Assembly (NCBI RefSeq): GCF_026571515.1
Contig: NW_026866645.1
Location: forward strand, 1 to 64,000
Origin: Ruditapes philippinarum
Lineage: Eukaryota
Direction of reading: 5' to 3'
Length of the DNA stretch: 64,000 nucleotides
Of this stretch, positions 2,926 through 59,883 are shown one piece after another (position 1 is the first letter of the stretch; every line of letters starts with the position of its first letter). The notes below the pieces were generated by a model that worked only from the letters and a program-made list of their open reading frames with translations, had not been told where the DNA came from and made no database searches. Both the position numbers and the translations under genes were made by a program.

Positions 2926-5073
2926 TTTTCACACAGGTTGCGAAAATAGTTTTATTGTGTTGATTTGAATTTTCAAAGAAGAATCAATCAGGTACTTGCA
3001 AACTCTTCAGACATAGACATTAATATTTGTTTTACTACATTTGTTTGGAATGCGGCATGCAGTACTACTGATTTATTGATTTGTTATATCAGTTTCCTTA
3101 ACTGCATCTTTGTTTACTTATTCTAAACTGTAAAATACCTACAACTTTCTGTATTAAATCATGCATGTATTTTAAAACTGTAAAACTTAATGTAACACTA
3201 TGACAATTAATGGCTTTGTTATTATATTTGTAATCAGTTGTTAAATCTATATAAAACATATTTCACAGAATCAACATTATTTTCATTCCTTAGACCTTAT
3301 CTAATGTTGAGGTGAAATCAATCCACACTGACCACTGGTAAATGGCCATATTGTTTCTGATAAGAGTTGTTTTGATAATGCACCATGGACAGTTTATAGT
3401 TCACGCCAGGGTTATAATAAGATATCCTGCAGAGCAGTAATTTAGATAAACAGTTACCTTCTACTAGGGAATTTCTGGCAAATGTGGGCCTATATTACAG
3501 AGTGTGAAGGGGTTTGACTTGCACATTTATGAAGCCGGGGGTTAGATAGACCACCGGGACTGTTCCCTACATACAAAGAACTTCGTAAGATGATTTCAAA
3601 TAACATTTGAATAAATTAATAAATAAATAAAACAAATAAAAACCAAAAACAAACAAAACACAAACAAAATACCAACAAACAATTAAAAAATTAGAAGAAG
3701 AAAAAAAACGTTCCTCCTCAATAAATAATGCTTTAATCTCACACATGCTTTCCGTGTATACTTGAATTAATGATTGTAAGAATTTGTAACTAAATGACAT
3801 ACATAATATTCAGTGTTTTGTACATTTTACTGGTCCTTCGGGATCATTGATTTTAGCGCATTCTGTGTTTGAAATTTGAGTACGGCTCAAAGTCTTTCCA
3901 CTTTTTTAATCCCATTCGACAGCTTCAATCAGAACCAGCATGCAATTGTCATGTTACTTTGTTGTGATTAGTGCTTCCGAGGTATCACATCCGAATTTTT
4001 TACAGATATCAGATGTGTTAATGTCTTGTTTTGTTTTCTTTAAATGTTTCATTCGTATTGTTTATTTGTATATATATATAAGCTTAAATGATGCTGATAT
4101 TTGAAATATTTACACACACAATTTTCTATATTGGAGACAATACCATAGGACAAGTAATGAGAAATAGTTGTAGACAAATGGCAATAATGCAAATAGTACA
4201 AAGATTCACAGACAAGATAATTTACAATGGGTAATATATTAATTTATTTTTATAACATTTTTGTTTCTTTACGTGTATAATTTTTAATTTTCTAAAACTT
4301 TAAGTTCCGGTTAGTGTAATGGTCGGGAAGTAGATAATTTCTCGGACTATTTTCTTAGAAATTTATTGTGAAAATGTGACTTAAGTTACTAGTTTTTAGT
4401 TTAGAACAATGTAATGTGATGTTATGTATATATATCTGGAATAAGGACATTCACAGGTGAACAGACTTTGTTATCTTTGAAGATTTTCTTCGTAACTGCA
4501 CATACTTCATGCATATACTTCATGCATATGTACATTTGTTTACCTGAGTCACGCTCTACTGATCAGAATTATAAACATTCCAAGCTTTTTTCACATTTGT
4601 GTGAGTGCAAATTTTCAACATTTTTTTAATTCTTTTTATTAAATTATTTGTTACCATTTCTTTTATTTATTTATTTTTGTTCAAACTTATGTATAAGCAA
4701 CATTGCATTTTCATATTGTTCCCTAAATTAGTTATTATACTCTGTAAATTTCGTCCAAAAGAGGAATTCTTTCTTTCTCTGTTTTACTTTCCTCGAAAAA
4801 ATACAACATGAATCTGTGATCGTATTGCCTGAAAGTTGTATTGGATAATTTGAACGTCGTGTATATATCTAGCCACTGAAGAATATCCAATAATAAGGTA
4901 CTGTTCATTGGGCGACAATTTCTTAAATCAAATGAAACGAGGGGATATATTTGCGGAGGTCTTAAAAAACTCCGACCAATATGTAACATTATTAAAGATA
5001 AAGGTTATGTCATCTAGCAGTTTTTTCCTGATTTAAGAAGAGAGATTGTCACCATCGCTCTAAATCTATCAAA

Positions 5074-5475
5074 ATGGACAAGGACATTGGGAGACATTCT
5101 AATAATTCTAGTATATCCTTTAATGATACAATACATTTTCTCGATGAGGATGGATAACTTTCTCGCATCCAGAAGCATGATATTTCTTTAGAGGAATTGT
5201 ATGACTATATATATCCACATACTTTAGAATGGATTGTAATAATAGTGTATAGTTTGACGTTTATAGTTGGTGTTGTTGGGAATGTACTAGTCTGTTTTGC
5301 TGTGTGGATGAATAAGGATTTTACGTACAATAACAAATATTTTCATGGTGAACTTATCAATTGCTGATCTTTTAATACTCGTGTTTTGCCCTTCCATTCA
5401 GCTTTATTGGTCGATGTAATGCCACGTGGTTTCTAGGAACTGGGTTTTCCCTGTAAACTTCATATATTTCTAGCA
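5074..5475 (+). pseudogene. Disrupted duplicate of the first coding exon of the orexin/allatotropin-type receptor (N-terminus, TM1, TM2, start of TM3)
   Basis: Manual translation MDKDIGRHSNNSS...ISLEELYDYIYPHTLEWIVIIVYSLTFIVGVVGNVLVCFAVWMNKD/LRTITNIFMVNLSIADLLILVFC/...ATWFLG/PCKLHIFLA|GTAAGT parallels 13725-14114. In-frame TAA at 5155 and several 1-nt indels. Confidence 0.85.
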
Positions 5476-8400
5476 GTAAGTTTTAAAATTTATTTATTTA
5501 AAAAAAATATTATCATGTTATAATAATTTATATTGAACTAGCCAAGCCAGTGTAATGCATAGGTAAAAGCCAACATATTTTTGAAAAAAATGCAACAATC
5601 ATGTTTTCAAATCAATATTTTTACTAATGTAAAAATAAACAATATAATCGAGGTGTCCAAACGAAAAAATAAATAATTATCGTTTGAATGTATCGGTGAC
5701 TCTTCGTTGCTTAAAAGAAGTGGAGTTTTCTTTTTCTCATTCATTTAGTTTTTTTATGTTATCATAAACAATTAACATTTTTTATTATTTTTATTTTATC
5801 AATCACTATTATAATTGTGCAAATCTCTTGAAATAAAAAAAACTAGCATAATGCTAATTCATTATCATTACTAAGAAAAAATTTGGGCCGGTGGATAAAA
5901 CTGTACTCGAAATACTGAATCATACAATTCTTTAAATGTGATCATGGATGAGATTCCGAGTTAAAAGAAGTTCTTTGATATTTTTTCCTTTATATTAAGC
6001 GTGAAGTATTTAACCTACAGATGTTTCATATTAGTGTGAATAATTTTTATGGCTTTTTGTCTATCATACTTCGAATCTTGGGGATGTTTGTAACTGTTTG
6101 GAGGTCAATAAGATCGTTCAGCCAGCACCACATGTGTGTTGAATTTGTTGTATTCTTTTGTTCATTATTTTTTATTTTGTTGTTGTTGCTTTTGGTAGTT
6201 CCAGTAACTATAATACGGGTAATTATCATCATAAGGATATGCTGCCTGCTTTTAAAATGTGTCTTTTGACGTATGTGTGTGCATGCAGCTTTATAAACTC
6301 AGATCCGATTTCTGTCAATATTTAATTTATTTTGTTTTACTATTTTCTTTTTGGCATGGGCAAACGTTTTTTTTCTTGAAGATTAAACGCCACTATTCAT
6401 GGTCTGGCTCTTATGTGTCCGCATTTGATTGTTTCCATGGAAGCCGCCGATGTTTTCAAATTTAAATTTGCACCATTTACACAATTTCAAGGTAAAACCA
6501 TTGAATTCTGCTTCAAGCATGGATGAAAGCTCACCAATACCATCTTGGACCTATATGCATAGTATTTTGGCGGGTTTGTTCTTTTTTTCTTTATTCTTTT
6601 TGGCGTTCTATAAAGAGTCAGTAAATTTTTTTATTTTAAATTCATATTTAAATCTTAAGATATCAAATCATTTTTATAATTATACACCCTCTATTATTTG
6701 TCATTGAAATGCAATGTGGCCTTCGTTTATCCAAGTTGTTTATATCTGATTTATTTTTTTTATTCCTTTCTAGTTAGTCTGGCAGCATGCGTTTGTAATC
6801 GAATAAAATACTGGAAAAAATAATTTTTCTTTTTATTGTGTATCTTAGTGTCTTCATAAAAGTCTCTAAGAAATTAAGTCAATGATTTTAAAAAGGTCAG
6901 ACGAAAGTCTTTTTTTGGGACTTATAGTATTTGGAATCAATTGCTTATTTTGGATCATGTTTAAAATGGTAATACAACTTTATGAATGATAAAACGTGTG
7001 TGTTTGATTCTTCATAAAATTCTTAAAAAGAGCTGTACAAATGTGAAAAGAACAAATAATGTAATTAACGAAATATCGAAGAGTTAGTAAAGTGTACAAT
7101 AATTTCTATGACTACTAACAGAATTGGACATTTCATAAGTGGGCGTTTTTGTACTTTTAAAATATATATATAGTTATTCATATCTGAGAAATATTTTTGC
7201 TAAACGTTTCTGTAGATAAAAAGAAATATAAAATCAACGTGAGTGTACAGTATTTAGAATTAAGAATATAGCCATTTTAAAGTTTCGAACGTTTTTATGG
7301 TCAGTCGTATTACATTTCGAAAAACAGCGCTTTATAAATCACAGGAAAAAACGGAATCCCTAAAAAAGGGCAAACGCGGCATATTTGAAAAATGCTGCAA
7401 GCTTGGTTTGATTAGACCCTGTTAATGGACGTAAGTGGAAATCGCAAGCATCGACTTTAGTGGAATTCAAATGTAAAATTTTGAATTTTTCAACATTCGC
7501 ACACAGTTTGCTATATTCACCTCAATAATTTAATCTTAATTAAAACAGGGCTGCCGATTTTCCGCGGATCCGCGGATTTCGTGAGCTCCTGGTCACTTTT
7601 GAGATCGATATAAATTCGACAAAGACAATAAATTCATTCGTCCATATTTTATATAGTACCAAAAACAGGCACGCTTCGGCTTCTATCGTTACGCTAGCCG
7701 CCTATGGTATACGTCTGGTAAAGCGCGCTTTTCTCATTGGTCATATCGAGTCTTTTCCGGCATTCTATTTTAGAATAACCAATCAAATTACAGTTTACAC
7801 ATTGTCGCTCTTGTCTTTGTTGTCAAAATGCGTCAAAATGTCGGATATTTGTCAAAATTTAGAGTCCAGAAAATTGATTTTAGGGGATACCAAATCATCA
7901 AGAATCCAGGAGATCAAAAGAGCACTTTGGGCCAGAGTTCAATTGCACGTTCATGACAGGGATAAAGAAAATATTAAATGCATTCCAAGTTTGACAATAA
8001 AGTTGGTATTTCCAGTTTGGTTACGTTTGGCAAAAGTTCTAGCGATGTTTTGACTTCTTACAGGTCATTTTTTCAAATGCAAGTGCTTTTGCCAACACGG
8101 CTGAAAAGTTCTAAAATTTGGGAGTGCATCTGTTAATGATTTATTTGTAAGAACAATTCTAACTTGTTACCAACATTAGTGGTTTGAGAGGCGTAACCGA
8201 CTCTCTCAGAATTCTGTTGTTTTTCTGATAGTTTAACGAATTAAACATGATAAGGGTATCTGTTACCTGTATTCAAAATAAACTTATTTCCTCCATTTTA
8301 ATTTTACATAGTGATAATAAAACTATTCATTTATTAAAGACAAAAGCCGATTTACACTTCCAAAATAACTACTGCTTCTAAACATTTAAGATTGCTAGCC

Positions 8401-51210: not shown

Positions 51211-51453
51211 ATTTGAGCCACGCCATGACAAATCCAACATAATGCGTTTGCGACCAGCATAAATCCAGACCAGCCTGCGCATCCGCACAGTCTGGTCAGG
51301 ATCCATGTTGTTCGCTATCATTATCTCTACTTGTTATAGGTTTTATAAGCGAACAGCATGGATCCTGATCAGACTGCGCGGATGCGCAGGCTGGTCTGAA
51401 TCCATGCTGGTCGCAAACGTATTATATTGGTTTTTTCATGGCGATGCTTATTT
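51211..51453. mobile_element. Foldback/palindromic MITE
   Basis: ~105-bp imperfect inverted arms (CGTTTGCGACCAGCAT..CAGACCAGCCTGCGCATCCGC / GCGGATGCGCAGGCTGGTCTG..ATGCTGGTCGCAAACG) around a ~30-bp loop. Confidence 0.88.
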
Positions 51454-53501
51454 TATTTTTCGCCACAAATCAGAAATATCTGGAACAAAAGTGATCACTA
51501 GGAAGCATTAAAAACAGCTTAATGACATAAAATTGCAGACTCGGTTTGACTGAACTGCAGAAGTCTAGCAGGAAGAGAAAATGATATGAGAAACACAAAT
51601 CATTTGTTATATTATGAAATGTGTTACCTCTATATTTTAACTGTGTATTTGTTGGCAAAATTCAAAGTTATAAATATAATAAAAATGAAATAAAGATGAA
51701 ATTTTATGATGAAACCAGGTTGCAAAAGCTCGTCAACACATATCCGTTTTCCATTTAAGTAACCCGAGACATACAATTGTGTTAAGGTGTATTGCGCGTT
51801 AAATTTATAATTTCCTATTAATGTAAAGAGGTTTTACGGGGCAATTTGCATGTTAAGAGTTTCGAAATAGAAAAAAAAATATCAACGAGAATGAACATAT
51901 TTGCGTGATATAAAATGATTGGAATGGCAAAATGAAAAACAAAATTGAATTGCCTCTCTTTTTTTTCATGCAAATAACTGATATTTCTGTTCATTGAATA
52001 TAAAAGCTCAAGTGTAAAATATTTTATAAACGTATGTGTGTGGGAGTCGGGGGTTGGTTGGGTCAGGGAATAATATATGCATCCGTTCAAATATAAAACG
52101 TAACAGTAAATTTGTAATTATACACCTAATTGGAAACTATAGAATATCACAAATGCAATGTTTATAAAAAAAACTGTTAGAAGGACAAAAGCCTGCCGCC
52201 AAAAACTTACCAGCAAATCCGTAGTAAATGTTAAATAACTTGTAGAAGTGCAAGTTCCTAATACAGTTTCGGCTACGTTTAACACACGTAATTCTTTACA
52301 GTCTAAAGATTTCGCCGCACTGATTAATTATTATGCTGACCTAACAATAAATGAGTCCGAGTATTGGAAGGACAACAACAAAAAAAGACAAAAAAAAAAA
52401 TTAACAAAACGATAATCATACCTGATCTTGCTTGATTTACTTAAAGACCATGTAACTCAATTTTTGTTTTATATCATAGATATAATGCCCAAATGAAGAT
52501 TTATCAACATTGTAAGTTCCAAAATCATTATTTGTAAAGATATTACCGAATTTACATTTAATTAATGGAGGTTATTAGAAATTTATTTTCTAAGTCTGAG
52601 TCAAACTTTTCAATAAGAAATAAATGCATATATTTGAATATTTACATATAATTACATATAATATGGACAAATATATATTTGCAGTGCACATCTTACATAT
52701 TCTTCGATGTTTGAAAATTGTTTAAGAGGCATGATTATATACATTTATAAAATTTCACTTAAGTGTGGTTACAACTTTAACAACCTTAATACATACATGA
52801 TCTTGAATTTTCAATTGTTATGAAAATACTAAATGTCCTCGAACAAACATCGTTCATACAGTGGATCAAATAATATAAGATATTAAGAAATTGATTAGAA
52901 ATTATAACGAATACTCTACCTTCGTCACATTAAAATGTAACGACTTAAGTAATACGATTTTTTCAGGTGCATTTACAATGTTATACAAAACATTTGAATT
53001 TACTCTTATTATTGCATTTAGAGAACCTTACATAACAAAACTTAATTTATTGCAAAATAAATGTTTTTATGGTCACTTACAAGTTTGATGGTGGGTTTCA
53101 TTAGGTCTTTAGTCATAGGTCGAAATATATTGGGTTCGAAAAAGCCGTACTAGTAAGTACACTAAGTTTATCGTTATGAGTAAATACAATGTGATAATTT
53201 ATGCTGATTAAGTCCGCCATTTTAGAAGAAGAAATAATTCATAACAATTTTCAATAAATTGCTTTAATGCACGGTAATTATACTTTATTTGATCGCTCAT
53301 TAGTCCAGGAAGGTTACAACTGATCCGGCAATAGCTGACACTGTAGGAATGTTTACCACAGTTTGGTATTTTGACCGTCTTTGTTTTCACGTTTTGTAAA
53401 CAAAGGAATTTGTGTATTGGACTACGCTTTGCGATTGGATTACTGCATAATGTGTATAAAGACAACGATGGTTGATTAACTCTTCAATTCTATGGTGAAA
53501 A

Positions 53502-54089
53502 ATGTGTATACTAATATTAGGAACATCTCACATACACTGGTTGGAACGATTTCTTCGACAAAAGGGCAACAATAACAATGTTTTTAACGTTGGTGGCGAT
53601 GCTAGCCCAGAAGTACATTTCCGAAGTATAAGTGGAGGAAAAATTTGTAATAAACACCACGTTAACTGTTGGGAACTGAGTATATCAGAACTGCGTCCAA
53701 AATATTTAATAATTCAATTAGGTGGAAACGATATTGATTCGTCTAAAATGGACAGTGCATCATTAGAACTTCTGGTTTTGCGAATAGTGAACATTTTCGC
53801 AACATTTCAAGTTCGATACAACATTGCGGAGGTTGTGGTGTTGCAGTTCATTCCAAGACCTAGGCCACGTTATATATCGGGAGATACCTATGGTGAATTG
53901 GTGCACAAAGCCAATATCATGCTCAAAGGGGAGCTATCAAAATTTCCTCGAATACTTTATTGGAAGATCAAGGGAATAAAAAATCCAACAACAAACATCT
54001 TTAGAGACGGTGTTCATTTGAATTTTGCTGGCATGATAAGATATTACAAAAACATTCGTGGAGCTGTTTTGAAGCTATTAAAATCATAA
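53502..54089 (+). CDS. SGNH/GDSL-fold hydrolase (esterase), intronless, 195 aa
   Basis: Block I ILGTSH, block II ISGG, block III QLGGND, block V RDGVHL. Ser/Asp/His triad and oxyanion Gly/Asn are present. Confidence 0.88.
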   Translation: MCILILGTSHIHWLERFLRQKGNNNNVFNVGGDASPEVHFRSISGGKICNKHHVNCWELSISELRPKYLIIQLGGNDIDSSKMDSASLELLVLRIVNIFATFQVRYNIAEVVVLQFIPRPRPRYISGDTYGELVHKANIMLKGELSKFPRILYWKIKGIKNPTTNIFRDGVHLNFAGMIRYYKNIRGAVLKLLKS

Positions 54090-54528
54090 TTTCCTGATCA
54101 AGTACGTGATAAGTACATACCAACAAGTGAAATGTGGAAAACTGTGGATCTCAAGTGAAGACGACAAATATATACTTTACATTTTAGTCCCAAAGTGAAC
54201 TTAAGACGTATACTAATTTTGGTTGAATGTGATAGTTATAGTATCAAATTATTTGAAGGACTATGTTTGCACATTTACTTGACAATTTCTAGCGAAATGT
54301 TTGTTTTTTATTACACACATAATGTTTGTGCATATAATGCTTTTATTGATGGCTTTGATGTAGTTAGTTTTTAATGATGCCTTAATTTTAAGGTGGTTTA
54401 TTCGACTTTAGTGGTAAAGTTCGTAAGATTTAACAGTTTGTTAAAGTCCTTAATTGTAAGGATATTTTAGTTTAAACACGCCTTAATTTTAAGGTAGTTG
54501 TTTAATGCTAAATAGTTTTTAGTTACAT

Positions 54529-55310
54529 ACACCTTAATTGTAAGGTGACAATTTTCAAAAGAGTTGAAAATATTTTCTAAGTTAATGTTCCTTAATTTTA
54601 AGGAATATGAGCTATAGCTTTACACCTTAATTGTAAGGTGACACCTTAATTGTAAGGTGACAATTTTCAAAGGAGTTGAAATCATTTTCTAAGTTAATGT
54701 TCCTTAATTTTAAGGAATATGAGCTATAGCTTTACACCTTAATTGTAAGGTGACACCTTAATTGTAAGGTGACAATTTTCAAAAGAGTTGAAATTATTTT
54801 CTAAGTTAATGTTCCTTAATTTTAAGGAATATGAGCTATAGCTTTACACCTTAATTGTAAGGTGACACCTTAATTGTAAGGTGACAATTTTCAAAGGAGT
54901 TGAAATCATTTTCTAAGTTAATGTTCCTTAATTTTAAGGAATATAAGCTATAGCTTTACACCTTAATTGTAAGGTGACACCTTAATTGTAAGGTGACAAT
55001 TTTCAAAAGAGTTGAAATTGTTTTCTAAGTTAATGTTCCTTAATTTTAAGGAATATGAGCTATAGCTTTACACCTTAATTGTAAGGTGACACCTTAATTG
55101 TAAGGTGACAATTTTCAAAAGAGTTGAAATTAATTTCTAAGTTAATGTTCCTTATTTTTAAGGAATATGAGCTATAGCTTTACACCTTAATTGTAAGGTG
55201 ACACCTTAATTGTAAGGTGACGATTTTCAAAAGAGTTGAAATTGTTTTCTAAGTTAATGTTCCTTAATTTAAAGGAATATGAGCTATAGCTTTACACCTT
55301 AATTGTAAGG
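54529..55310. repeat. Tandem array, 7 x 112 bp, built from palindromes
   Basis: Unit starts at 54529, 54641, 54753, 54865, 54977, 55089 and 55201. Each unit has three CCTTAATTKTAAGG-type motifs. Three more motif copies lie at ~54380-54495. Confidence 0.97.
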
Positions 55311-55341
55311 TTGTCAGAATAATCACAGTTTTACTGTACAT

Positions 55342-55343
<2 letters not shown>

Positions 55344-55378
<35 letters not shown>
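55344..55378. repeat. Poly(T) tract, ~35 nt
   Basis: Seen directly. Confidence 0.9.
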
Positions 55379-55382
<4 letters not shown>

Positions 55383-55411
55383 CGAGTCAGCGATATACCG
55401 AAGTGTATCAT

Positions 55412-56585
55412 ATAGAGGATATTTGTTTGTTTGTGTGTAAGATGAAATTTTATTTCATCGAGTGGGCTTTAAAAACAGTATTCTCACGAGTGGCGTAGCC
55501 ACGAGTGAGAATACTGTTTTTAAAGTTCACGAGATGAAATAAAATTACATCTTACACAACAAACAGACAAATTTTCTTTTTATTTTATGCTTTAAAACAA
55601 GTTAAAACGGAATTTCCATAATTTTAACGTTGATATTAAAATCTGTTTCCCCCGTTGAGAGCCCCATTTAGAGGGAATTTCTCATTAAAAACAAGAAGTC
55701 TTGAGCTGCAAAATAAGTCCGCCAATGAAGGTTAAATGAATGTGATATTTATTCATCTTATCAAAAAATATGAATGATCGCTTGTTTTAATAATAAAAAC
55801 AAACAATTCTTGTAGGAGAAAAAGTCCAACCATCCATCCATATATCTGTTACTTACTGCGAATTTATATTAGACCTGGCTTTGTAAAATGTAAACGGCAG
55901 CCATTTTTTAAAGTCGTGTATTTCATGGGAGGAAAATAATTGTGTAAGATACAGAAGGATATAATTTGGATTTGTTAGTCATACACCTTTTTAAAAGAAA
56001 GAAAACTTATTTGAGGATTGTAACAGACAAAAAATAAGTGTTGACAGAAGTGAAAACATTCAGAAAAGGAGCTAGGAAAATGGAAAACTTGGAAGCTTGC
56101 TAAGGCATTGTAAGGAACGCTGGGTTGATTTACTTATTTTACGAGTGATAGCTGTCAATGCTTTTCAATTTTTCATAAAGCATACGGCAGTTATTGCTCG
56201 TAGGATACTTTAATATGCCCAAATGTCATCAAGAGCAGTTTTGCATGGGGAAGGAATGTATTTTTCAGACTGTAAAAACGAAACAAAAAAATTTAGAGAC
56301 GAAATTTTGTGATTGGAATTTGAAGGAATAGAAGTAAGTTTTCTCTCTTTTAATACTTTTGACATTTATGTTATTTATCTATTTCAGCTTTGCTATTTTT
56401 TTAACAGCCTGATATTGTCAGAATTGTCAGTAAAAATAAAATTGAGGTACCACATGGGGAAAATCTTAAAAAAGTAGTTTCGTCATTGAAAAAAGTGAAA
56501 TTATATTTTGATAATTTTCACTGTGAAATTATCAAATATAATTTTCACGGATAAATCAGTAATCCACTGAAAAGCATAAAATAAA
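55412..56585 (+). mobile_element. Hairpin-ended non-autonomous element (Crypton-like by inference), nested in the split-repeat element
   Basis: Starts ATAGAGGATATT with a ~165-bp hairpin. TTTATTTTATGCTTT (55579-55593) is inverted at the far end (56571-56585). Second hairpin at ~56495-56548. Confidence 0.7.
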
Positions 56586-58538
56586 TTTCAATGTACAGTT
56601 TCATTTATAAACCTGTTGCTGGGAGTGTAAAATTTATCTACATGTTTAAATGTCAGATCGTTTATGCTAGCAAATATGCGCGTTTAGAGAGAGATTTTAC
56701 ATCTGTTAGGATAGACGTATGTATAGCGGGTTATTTTTTTTTTTTTTTATTGAGAAGATAATTTTTGTTGTTTAGCTACAGCTTTAATTTTGTGTTAAGG
56801 TAAATTAAAACTTCATGTCTTAGTTTAAGATGCCATCATGGTTATATTTTAATTCTATCGATTTAAGATCTATTTGGATATTACACATATGTTACAGCTT
56901 TACTTTCAAAAGGTAATTTTAATAAGGACAACATTTATTTCAGTCACAAGTTTACTTTATGTCATGGAGACAAGGGCCTCTGACATACAAAGTGCTTTCT
57001 AACATATAAAGTCAATTAAATCCAATGTGCCAATAAAATGTTGTCTTATAATAGGTTGTTTAGTTTCCTTATCATCTTGTGATGTATATATTTTTAATAT
57101 TCTTCTTTGTTTTCTTTTTAAGTTTATTTTTCATTAGCATTGTTTCAGACATTTAAAGAATAATTTTGTTTTCTTCCTTTTACTTGACTAGTCAATTTCA
57201 TTCAAGAAGTTTTGGTTGGGGGAATTGTGTTTTACACAATTTGTGGCAATATTCTTAGAACCCAACCTTTGATAATTTTTGGGATACGTGTGTATATATT
57301 TTTATATACATTTTTCAGAAATGTTTGCTGCTTTGTATACAATTTTATGTTATATTATAACTTTCATATTGTTATATATGTTTTTACGTCATTTATTATT
57401 AAATGGCCATTTCACAATTTTATGTTAGTTTGATAACTTTCATATCAACATTGTTTATATGTTTTTTCCGTCATTTACTATTAAATGGCCATTTCAATTT
57501 CAAAGTGTAGTTGTTATTCTTGAAAATTATCAAACAGAGAAAACTGAAAATTATCAAACAGAGAAAACTTCTTAAGGCAAAGATACAACAAATTGAAATG
57601 TTGACATAAAACTTAATTTATTGCAAAATAAATGTTTTTATGGTCACTTACAAGTTTGATGGTGGGTTTCATTAGGTCTTTAGTCATAGGTCGAAATATC
57701 TTGGGTTCGAAAAAGCCGTACTAGTAAGTACACTAAGTTTATCGTTATGAGTAAATACAATGTGATAATTTATGCTGTTTAAGTCCGCCATTTTAGAAGA
57801 AGAAATAATTCATAACAATTTTCAATAACCCACCATCCCACCCACATTCAGTATTCAATTTTTAACAAAATGATAAACATTCAATAACGTTTGGTGTATG
57901 TATATAATTTTATATACAAATGTTTTTTGGCAATATTCTTAGAACCCAACCTTTGATAACTTTTGGGATACGTGTGTATATATTTTTATATACATTTTTC
58001 AGAAATGTTTGCTGCTTTGTATACAATTTTTTGTTATATTATAACTTTCATATTGTTATATATGTTTTTACGTCATTTATTATTAAATGGCCATTTCACA
58101 ATTTTATGTTAGTTTGATAACTTTCATATCAACATTGTTTATATGTTTTTTCCGTCATTTATTATTAAATGGCCATTTCAATTTCAAAGTGTAGTTGTTA
58201 TTCTTGAAAATTATCAAACAGAGAAAACTGAAAATTATCAAACAGAGAAAACTTCTTAAGGCAAAGATACAACAAATTGAAATGTTGACATAAATATCGT
58301 TTATTTTGTATTCAAATCCATTTTATCAATAGATTTCATTTAAAAATATATTGTATACTACATTAAAATAGATATTTGAAAATTAAATGCATAATAACTG
58401 TACTTTTTTGATATAACTATTCTAAAGCTCTGATCAGACTAGTCAAGAAGAAGAAAATGAACTACATGTAAAATAAAAACTAAATAAAAAGAAAAAAAAA
58501 CAAACAAACAATTGAATGTATTTAGCTTTATACAGAAT

Positions 58539-59262: not shown

Positions 59263-59606
59263 CTAAAGTCTTTTCTCAACAATGACTTTGTTTGGGTTGT
59301 ATCTTTTTACAAAGTGTCCAATTTGTTCCATATCCGGGCACCTTCCAGACACCATTTTCCATTTGAAGCGTTGCATCAAACATGCAAAGATCAAATGTAG
59401 TTGTGGTTTTGCTACAAATTCCCCAAGGCAAACTCTCTTTCCAGCCGAAAATGGCAACCAATTCTTAGGTTTAGGCCCTAGTTTGCCGTTTTCGTCCAAG
59501 TACCTTTCTGGCATAAATCGCTCGACCTCTTCCCATGCATCTGGGTCGTTGTGTAAGGCCCAGTGGTTGATGTTTACTGCTGTTCCTTTAGGAATTTTGT
59601 AACCGC
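59263..59606 (-). CDS. Cytochrome P450 (clan 2, CYP17-like), last exon
   Basis: TTTTGCAG| GGYKIPKGT..HWALHND..FMPERYL..PFSAGKRVCLG..*. PERF-type and heme-Cys motifs. Confidence 0.95.
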
Positions 59607-59883
59607 CTGCAAAACACAACATACAGTTTCAAACAAGAGAAAATTATTTAATAAACAGTAGTGTTTGATGAAAAGGTTAAAATTCTCAGCCAAACTAAGA
59701 AACAAATAATATATGATGCCACATAAGTTGGGCCTCGGTTTGCGTTTCTTTGTTGTACAGACTGCCATGCCCTGAGATTGTTTATAAAACGCTATGAACG
59801 GCAGCAAAAAGGACATTTAAAAATAAATGCAATAATTTTTGTTCTATTAACCAAAACAGGAAAAAAAAATGAAAAACGCTTAC

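What the first reader, a model, noticed from the sequence alone, without database searches (positions are those of the whole stretch)
53037..58294. Split-direct-repeat element that has lost RT/RNase H/recombinase but keeps an intact SGNH esterase
Seen: A1(221 bp)-SGNH ORF-array-...-B1(367)-A2(221)-99-bp spacer-B2(367), with only ~2 and ~3 substitutions between repeat copies and no other coding remnant. Knowledge: A1...B1A2B2 split direct repeats define Ngaro and PAT-like tyrosine-recombinase retrotransposons, and some animal Ngaro elements carry an extra SGNH hydrolase ORF. Inference: a recently active satellite-like element that borrows RT and recombinase from a helper while retaining the accessory esterase. 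This suggests the esterase benefits the element (particle or membrane interaction, or complementing the helper). I know of no description of such an esterase-only form but cannot search.
Basis: partly seen in the sequence, partly recalled or inferred. Interest (0 to 1): 0.9.

Follow-up and report, generated by a model that had tools for sequence, protein, structure and literature searches.

The report
Internally deleted Ngaro retrotransposon copy
This is one defective copy of an ordinary mobile-element family in a mollusc genome: a single internal deletion removed its replication genes and happened to spare its esterase gene, and nothing shows that this esterase-only form has ever copied itself.

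Summary
A1/A2 are 221 bp with 2 mismatches. B1/B2 are 371 bp with 4 mismatches and lie around a 95-bp spacer. An intact 195-aa SGNH hydrolase ORF and a 112-bp tandem array lie between them. An empty-site contig from another public run joins 53038 to 58295, so this is a true, polymorphic insertion.

The interpretation does not hold. Sibling copies at 94-99% identity carry SGNH, array, gag, RT, RNase H and tyrosine recombinase. They are Ngaro-like elements. The window copy differs from them by one clean deletion at 56789-56791 with a 3-bp TTT microhomology. It also carries a nested 1.17-kb hairpin element at 55412-56585.

Other non-autonomous forms of this family did amplify: a form lacking part of RNase H and most of the recombinase (11 loci), and tail-only forms. 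Every SGNH match scored in copies of the amplified 82-89% subfamily is broken. The ORF is intact here because the copy is young and the deletion lies downstream.

A side result is that SGNH lies upstream of the recombinase in 16 of 16 co-located pairs in this genome. Published vertebrate Ngaro elements place it after the recombinase. Other first readers of this scan noted SGNH-first elements elsewhere in this genome.

The parts
53037..53257 (+). A1, the 5' split direct repeat. Its first 3 bases (AAA) are the crossover core.
   Evidence: 2 mismatches to A2; same start in other copies; empty-site joint at 53038.
53502..54089 (+). Intact SGNH/GDSL hydrolase ORF of 195 aa. Catalytic residues are Ser9, Gly45, Asn76, Asp169 and His172.
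   Evidence: dN/dS is 0.30 against the C5191 copy.
54417..55388 (+). Internal tandem array: 112-bp unit, 7 clean copies at 54529-55311, each with short palindromes. It ends in a run of 35 T at 55344-55378.
   Evidence: The same array is present in siblings C15799 and C2262.
55412..56585 (.). Nested foreign insertion, not part of the Ngaro element. It is a 1.17-kb non-autonomous repeat with a roughly 175-bp palindromic end and is present at hundreds of loci at 96-99% identity.
   Evidence: The empty site is seen in siblings. Reads and a contig skip 55411->56585.
56586..56791 (+). Leader that lies between the array and gag in full-length siblings. It ends at the deletion.
   Evidence: matches L062 2349-2560 and L002.
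56789..56791 (+). Deletion junction with TTT microhomology. About 4.6 kb holding gag, RT, RNase H and the recombinase is missing.
56792..57239 (+). 3' untranslated tail that follows the recombinase ORF in full-length siblings.
57240..57610 (+). B1 repeat.
57608..57828 (+). A2 repeat. The B1|A2 junction reads GACAT-AAA-ACTT, as a circle junction would.
57829..57923 (+). 95-bp spacer between A2 and B2.
57924..58294 (+). B2 repeat, the 3' end of the element.
   Evidence: (joint at 58295).

Best explanation
Window 53037-58294 is one young, insertion-polymorphic copy of a multi-copy Ngaro-like tyrosine-recombinase retrotransposon of a mollusc.

The complete order in this family is A1, SGNH ORF, tandem array, gag, RT/RNase H, recombinase, 3' tail, B1A2, spacer, B2. 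This copy lost about 4.6 kb (gag through the recombinase) in a single deletion with a 3-bp microhomology. The deletion happened either by a template jump during reverse transcription or by a slip or repair event after insertion; the data cannot tell which. Later it received a 1.17-kb nested insertion.

The SGNH ORF is intact because the copy is about 99% identical to a sibling copy that still holds the coding region and the deletion begins well downstream of the ORF. Nothing shows that selection acts on this locus.

The copy keeps both sets of terminal repeats, so in principle a helper could mobilise it (inference). Nothing shows that this has happened.

In lineages that keep the full gene set the SGNH protein looks functional: it has a conserved catalytic set and dN/dS is about 0.3. 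What it does is unknown. By analogy with the esterase of CR1/L2-type LINE ORF1 proteins (my own knowledge, not tested here), a lipid or membrane step of particle handling is the likeliest role.
For: - Full-length siblings: C5191 (L063) has SGNH 1957-2544, gag 3872-4435, RT 4539-5501, RNase H 5475-5941 and recombinase 5978-6909. C2262 (L062) and C15799 (L002 plus L061) hold the same genes. Pfam gives RT_RNaseH above its cut-off, and RVT_1 and Phage_int_SAM_1 just below theirs.
- Deletion: window 56585-56791 matches L062 2349-2560, and window 56789 onward matches the post-recombinase tail of L061, L063 and L032. The donor ends share TTT.
- Uniqueness: a 301-bp query across the junction is spanned only by the window. 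All 39 other matches stop at 150-152.
- Real, polymorphic insertion: an X3 contig joins 53038 to 58295. Termini are shared with about 25 copies that have different flanks.
- Other derivatives amplified: 11 loci share the breakpoints L063 5728->6793. Tail-only copies share a common 5' boundary.
- SGNH status: only 3 intact family ORFs exist in the genome, and the copies of the 82-89% subfamily carry stops. dN/dS is 0.30, with 9 synonymous and 10 non-synonymous changes, one-sided p=0.012.
- SGNH identity: S9, D77 and H172 are invariant and N76 nearly so among 44 relatives. The model has pLDDT 95.7, and its best PDB matches are GDSL lipases, PAF acetylhydrolase and sialate O-acetylesterase.
Against: - The junction search scores only the best 40 of 302 first-look candidates, so a diverged second copy could be missed.
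- No independent reads were shown to cross 56790. The X1 and X3 contigs there run on into full-length-type sequence, and those animals may lack this insertion. The deletion therefore rests on the assembly alone.
- RNA reads cover the SGNH region at low depth, but they cannot be assigned to this copy rather than its 99% sibling.
Confidence: 0.85

Rival explanations
1. One reading: an esterase-only, satellite-like non-autonomous element that is mobilised by a helper and keeps the esterase because the esterase benefits the element.
For: - The termini A1 and B1A2-B2 are complete.
- The family does mobilise defective members in trans: 11 copies share one deletion.
- The SGNH ORF is intact, and dN/dS is 0.3 among intact copies.
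- The SGNH region is transcribed at a low level.
Against: - There is a single copy of the junction.
- The amplified derivatives carry broken SGNH ORFs, so the esterase is not needed in cis.
- Intactness is expected at about 1% divergence from a sibling copy that still holds the coding region.
- The dN/dS signal comes from the lineage as a whole, not from this copy.
Confidence: 0.05
2. The deletion, or the whole arrangement, is an assembly artefact: a collapse or chimaera between repeat copies.
For: No independent contig was seen to cross 56790, and the family has near-identical siblings.
Against: - The junction has only 3 bp of shared sequence, whereas collapses form across long repeats.
- Both outer ends are confirmed by an independent empty-site contig.
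- The nested insertion and the flanks are contiguous in the contig.
Confidence: 0.05
3. A host SGNH gene flanked by chance by repeats, that is, a captured or domesticated gene rather than an element gene.
For: The ORF is intact and stands alone. Relatives are mostly stand-alone proteins of about 190 aa.
Against: - The ORF sits inside the element in every sibling.
- In 16 of 16 co-located pairs it lies 3.4-6.4 kb (10.8 kb in the C15799 copy, which holds a nested retroelement) upstream of a recombinase ORF on the same strand.
- The whole locus is absent from the empty-site allele.
Confidence: 0.02

Closest known systems
Ngaro-like retrotransposons (order DIRS), for example zebrafish Ngaro1 and Xenopus DIRS-53_XT
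   Same: Split direct repeats A1...B1A2B2; gag, RT/RNase H and tyrosine recombinase in full-length siblings; no methyltransferase domain; an extra SGNH hydrolase ORF of unknown role (PMC9210276).
   Different: Here the SGNH ORF is the first gene, upstream of gag, and is separated from gag by a tandem array. The published vertebrate elements place it after the recombinase. The window copy itself lacks gag, RT, RNase H and the recombinase.
SIRE, the short non-autonomous derivative of VIPER in Trypanosoma cruzi
   Same: An internally deleted tyrosine-recombinase retroelement that keeps the split-repeat ends (PMC6681497).
   Different: SIRE is amplified and non-coding. The window copy is single and keeps one ORF. 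The tail-only and the RNase H-recombinase deletion forms found in this genome are the closer analogues of SIRE.
Esterase (SGNH) domain of ORF1 proteins of CR1/L2-type LINEs
   Same: An SGNH-fold esterase carried by a retrotransposon, with function still unsettled (my own knowledge).
   Different: A different element class. There the esterase is a domain of ORF1p; here it is a separate 195-aa ORF. No phylogeny against LINE esterases was made here.

Membership tests
Ngaro-like YR retrotransposon | Split direct repeats A1 ... B1 A2 B2 | tested here: met
   The same layout is present in about 25 other copies.
Ngaro-like YR retrotransposon | Tyrosine recombinase ORF | tested here: not met
   Absent from the window copy. 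Present in siblings: Phage_int_SAM_1 E=2.8e-4, just below its cut-off, and an H-x-x-R ... Y motif seen in the ORF translations.
Ngaro-like YR retrotransposon | RT and RNase H | tested here: not met
   Absent from the window copy. In siblings RT_RNaseH scores 30.5 bits against a cut-off of 24.8, and an RVT_1 fragment scores 22.9 bits, below its cut-off.
Ngaro-like YR retrotransposon | No methyltransferase domain between RNase H and the recombinase (this separates Ngaro from DIRS-like) | tested here: met
   In L063 RNase H ends at 5941 and the recombinase starts at 5978. In L062 the two overlap.
Ngaro-like YR retrotransposon | RT or recombinase groups with Ngaro reference sequences in a tree | not tested
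A PAT-like affinity is therefore not formally excluded.
Ngaro-like YR retrotransposon | Integration without target-site duplication, at a short core | tested here: met
   The empty allele reads ...AAC-AAG-TATCG. The filled allele has AAA at both ends, and the internal junction is GACAT-AAA-ACTT. The empty allele rests on one contig.
Vertebrate-type Ngaro with hydrolase ORF | SGNH ORF located after the recombinase | tested here: not met
   SGNH lies upstream of gag and the recombinase in this family and in 16 of 16 co-located pairs.
SGNH/GDSL hydrolase | Blocks I, II, III and V with Ser, Gly, Asn and His (plus Asp) | tested here: met
   S9, G45, N76, D169 and H172 are invariant or nearly so in 44 relatives.
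SGNH/GDSL hydrolase | SGNH flavodoxin-like fold | tested here: met
   Model pLDDT 95.7. Foldseek TM is about 0.7 to 3p94, 1wab and 6xpg.
SGNH/GDSL hydrolase | Pfam gathering score | tested here: not met
   Lipase_GDSL_2 scores 27.8 bits against a cut-off of 32.9. The 55%-identical relative P0002 passes with 33.6 bits.
SGNH/GDSL hydrolase | Esterase activity | not testable with these tools
   This needs an enzyme assay.
Amplified non-autonomous (helper-dependent) element | Two or more copies with the same internal deletion and different flanks | tested here: not met
   Only the window spans the junction.

The most novel reading that the evidence does not exclude
At family level, the Ngaro-like elements of this mollusc have a gene order not described in the papers I could read. 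An SGNH hydrolase under purifying selection is the first gene, then a palindrome-rich tandem array, then gag, RT/RNase H and the recombinase. The family has also produced several classes of trans-mobilised derivatives. The window copy would then be a freshly born member that can still express the esterase. The stronger claim, that the esterase-only form is itself a propagating satellite, has a probability of about 0.05.
Probability: 0.4. Interest if true: 0.4.

Novelty: new member of a known kind. Interest (0 to 1): 0.25.

Why it matters
As a single defective copy it matters little. Its value is as a clean, dated example. The insertion is polymorphic and has exact ends and a visible empty site, which shows the integration core of a Ngaro-like element.

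The family around it is more useful. It offers natural 'experiments' on the still unexplained Ngaro hydrolase: copies with and without SGNH, and with and without the recombinase. These suggest that the hydrolase is conserved in lineages that keep the full gene set but is dispensable in cis for mobilised derivatives.

Tried and rejected
- Tandem-duplication or assembly origin of the repeats: rejected, because the same A...BA-B layout is present in about 25 copies with different flanks and an empty-site contig exists.
- Reading 55412-56585 as part of the element: rejected, because it is a nested repeat that is absent from the siblings.
- Direct PDB sequence search for SGNH and for the recombinase C-terminus: nothing useful.
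- Word-based protein search for SGNH: one hit only. The full HMMER scan then found 663 clusters.
- RNA start and end mapping: no pile-ups of read ends (table 6). The reads cannot be assigned to this copy.
Their structure is inferred from coordinates.
- Goodwin & Poulter 2004 is not held in the library. The published ORF order is taken from PMC9210276.
Full report
**Observation.** The repeats are as described. A1 53037-53257 and A2 57608-57828 are 221 bp and differ at 2 positions. B1 57240-57610 and B2 57924-58294 are 371 bp and differ at 4 positions. B1 and A2 overlap by AAA, and a 95-bp spacer separates A2 from B2. The only ORF of note is 53502-54089 (+), 195 aa. Downstream lies a 112-bp tandem array with 7 clean copies at 54529-55311, each holding short palindromes, followed by a run of 35 T.

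**The SGNH ORF.**
- Pfam gives Lipase_GDSL_2 at E=4e-6, which is below the gathering score.
- A full HMMER scan found 663 clusters of relatives, mostly stand-alone proteins of about 190 aa.
- In an alignment of 44 relatives, S9, D77, R119 and H172 are invariant. G7, G45, G74, G75, N76, D169 and G170 are nearly so. This is the complete SGNH catalytic set.
- An AlphaFold model built on that alignment has pLDDT 95.7.
- Its best PDB matches are GDSL-like lipases, PAF acetylhydrolase and sialate O-acetylesterases, with TM about 0.7.
- The Atlas places the nearest clusters in Mollusca, Cnidaria, Annelida and Chordata.

**What the element is.** The genome is a 1.4-Gb animal assembly. Several RNA runs that hold part of the stretch are labelled mollusc metagenome. 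Searching it with the element showed three things.

1. *A nested foreign repeat.* Window 55412-56585 is a separate repeat with hundreds of copies at 96-99% identity and a palindromic end of about 175 bp. Siblings C15799 and C2262 run straight across an empty site at this point. RNA reads and a contig also skip 55411->56585.

2. *A multi-copy family with gene-bearing siblings.*
   - C15799 is 99% identical, C2262 98%, C5191 94% and C4487 93%. About 20 further copies are 82-89% identical.
   - The siblings hold a gag-like ORF with a zinc knuckle, RT, RNase H and a tyrosine recombinase between the array and the 3' tail.
   - Pfam supports RT_RNaseH above its cut-off, and RVT_1 and Phage_int_SAM_1 just below theirs.
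   - RNase H abuts the recombinase, so there is no room for a methyltransferase domain.
   - With the split repeats, this makes the family Ngaro-like as defined in PMC9210276 and PMC6681497. No reference tree could be made.
   - Each sibling I read is itself damaged. C5191 has frameshifts. C15799 has a retroelement nested in opposite orientation within its recombinase region. C2262 lacks the 5' part. I describe this only and built no consensus.

3. *One deletion in the window copy.* Window 56585-56791 matches the leader before gag (L062 2349-2560). From 56789 onward the window matches the tail that follows the recombinase (L061, L063, L032). The two donor ends share TTT. About 4.6 kb is missing.

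**Is the deleted form a propagating element?**
- A 301-bp query centred on the junction is spanned only by the window itself. The other 39 matches end at position 150-152 on one side or the other.
- In runs X1 and X3, contigs reaching 56789 or 56791 continue into full-length-type sequence.
- Caveats: only the 40 best candidates were scored, and no independent read was shown to cross the junction. However, a 3-bp overlap is not what an assembly collapse looks like.

**The insertion itself is real and young.**
- A 197-nt contig of run X3 joins 53038 to 58295 with one G between. The target reads AAC-AAG-TATCG. In the filled allele AAA stands at both ends, and the internal B1|A2 junction is GACAT-AAA-ACTT.
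- That is the pattern expected for recombinase-mediated integration of a circle at a 3-bp core without target duplication.
- All other copies end at the same base and have unrelated flanks.

**What does amplify in this family.**
- Eleven loci on eleven contigs share identical breakpoints (L063 5728->6793). The deletion removes the end of RNase H and most of the recombinase.
- At least eight loci are tail-only units (B1-A2-spacer-B2) with a common 5' boundary about 27 bp before B1 and different flanks.
- Single loci show other deletions. In C9108, for example, the array is joined directly to the recombinase tail.
- Trans-mobilisation of defective members therefore happens. In these copies, however, the SGNH ORF carries stops. 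Only three intact ORFs of this family exist in the genome: the window, C15799 and C5191.
- The esterase is thus not retained by mobilised derivatives.

**Selection on the SGNH ORF.**
- Between the window and C5191, dN/dS is 0.30, from 9 synonymous and 10 non-synonymous changes, one-sided p=0.012.
- Diverged SGNH ORFs (26-46% identity), many of them open, lie 3.4-6.4 kb (10.8 kb in the C15799 copy, which holds a nested retroelement) upstream of a recombinase ORF on the same strand in 16 of 16 co-located pairs.
- The hydrolase is therefore conserved in the lineages that keep the full gene set, and there it is the first gene.
- Published vertebrate Ngaro elements place it after the recombinase (PMC9210276).
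- Other first readers of this scan independently noted SGNH-first Ngaro elements elsewhere in this genome (s1-792560, s1-811344). I treat those notes as leads that my coordinates support.

**Expression.** Two RNA runs give depth of about 1-9 over the SGNH region in both orientations, and no read-end pile-ups. Position 54035 shows both the window's G and the sibling's T. Transcripts therefore come from more than one copy and cannot be assigned to this one.

**Verdict.** This is an ordinary, single, internally deleted and secondarily interrupted copy of a Ngaro-like retrotransposon. The repeat architecture and the intact SGNH ORF are real. The 'esterase-only satellite' reading is not supported. 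The modest points of interest are the clean empty site and 3-bp core, the SGNH-first gene order of the family, and the set of amplified defective derivatives.

**Limits.** The 5' halves of the diverged subfamily and the distant SGNH-recombinase pairs were therefore judged from coordinates only.

Noticed in passing
window 55412-56585: A nested 1.17-kb non-autonomous repeat whose first 175 bp or so form a palindrome. It has hundreds of copies at 96-99% identity and is highly represented in RNA reads. It sits at an A^T or T^T site without a clear duplication, which is Helitron- or Helentron-like. This is unverified.
   Followed up: partly
L050-L052 and L054-L059 (for example C3725, C13658, C4612, C12636): Tail-only units of about 1.08 kb (B1-A2-spacer-B2) with a common 5' boundary about 27 bp upstream of B1 and different flanks. 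They may be a SIRE-like short derivative of the family.
   Followed up: partly
L034-L038, L040-L043, L046, L049: Eleven copies on different contigs share one deletion (L063 5728->6793) that removes the end of RNase H and most of the recombinase. This is an amplified recombinase-less subfamily.
   Followed up: yes
L061 6095-8594 (C15799:25094-27593): A retroelement in opposite orientation, with RT, RNase H and integrase-like ORFs, is nested inside the recombinase region of the 99% sibling.
   Followed up: no
window 59263-59622 (-): The last exon of a cytochrome P450 gene (heme-binding motif F-S-A-G-K-R-V-C-L-G) lies about 1 kb from the element's 3' end. The element lies just beyond the gene's stop codon, perhaps in its 3' UTR, in opposite orientation.
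   Followed up: no
window 54529-55311, compared with arrays in C9046, C418, C15360 and others: The internal tandem array has a 112-bp period in the window's lineage. In the 82-89% subfamily the period is about 153 bp and the arrays are much longer, up to about 5 kb.
   Followed up: partly
window 51216-51448: A 101-nt inverted repeat (88% complementary, 31-nt loop) lies upstream of the element. It is probably another small foldback or MITE-type repeat.
   Followed up: no
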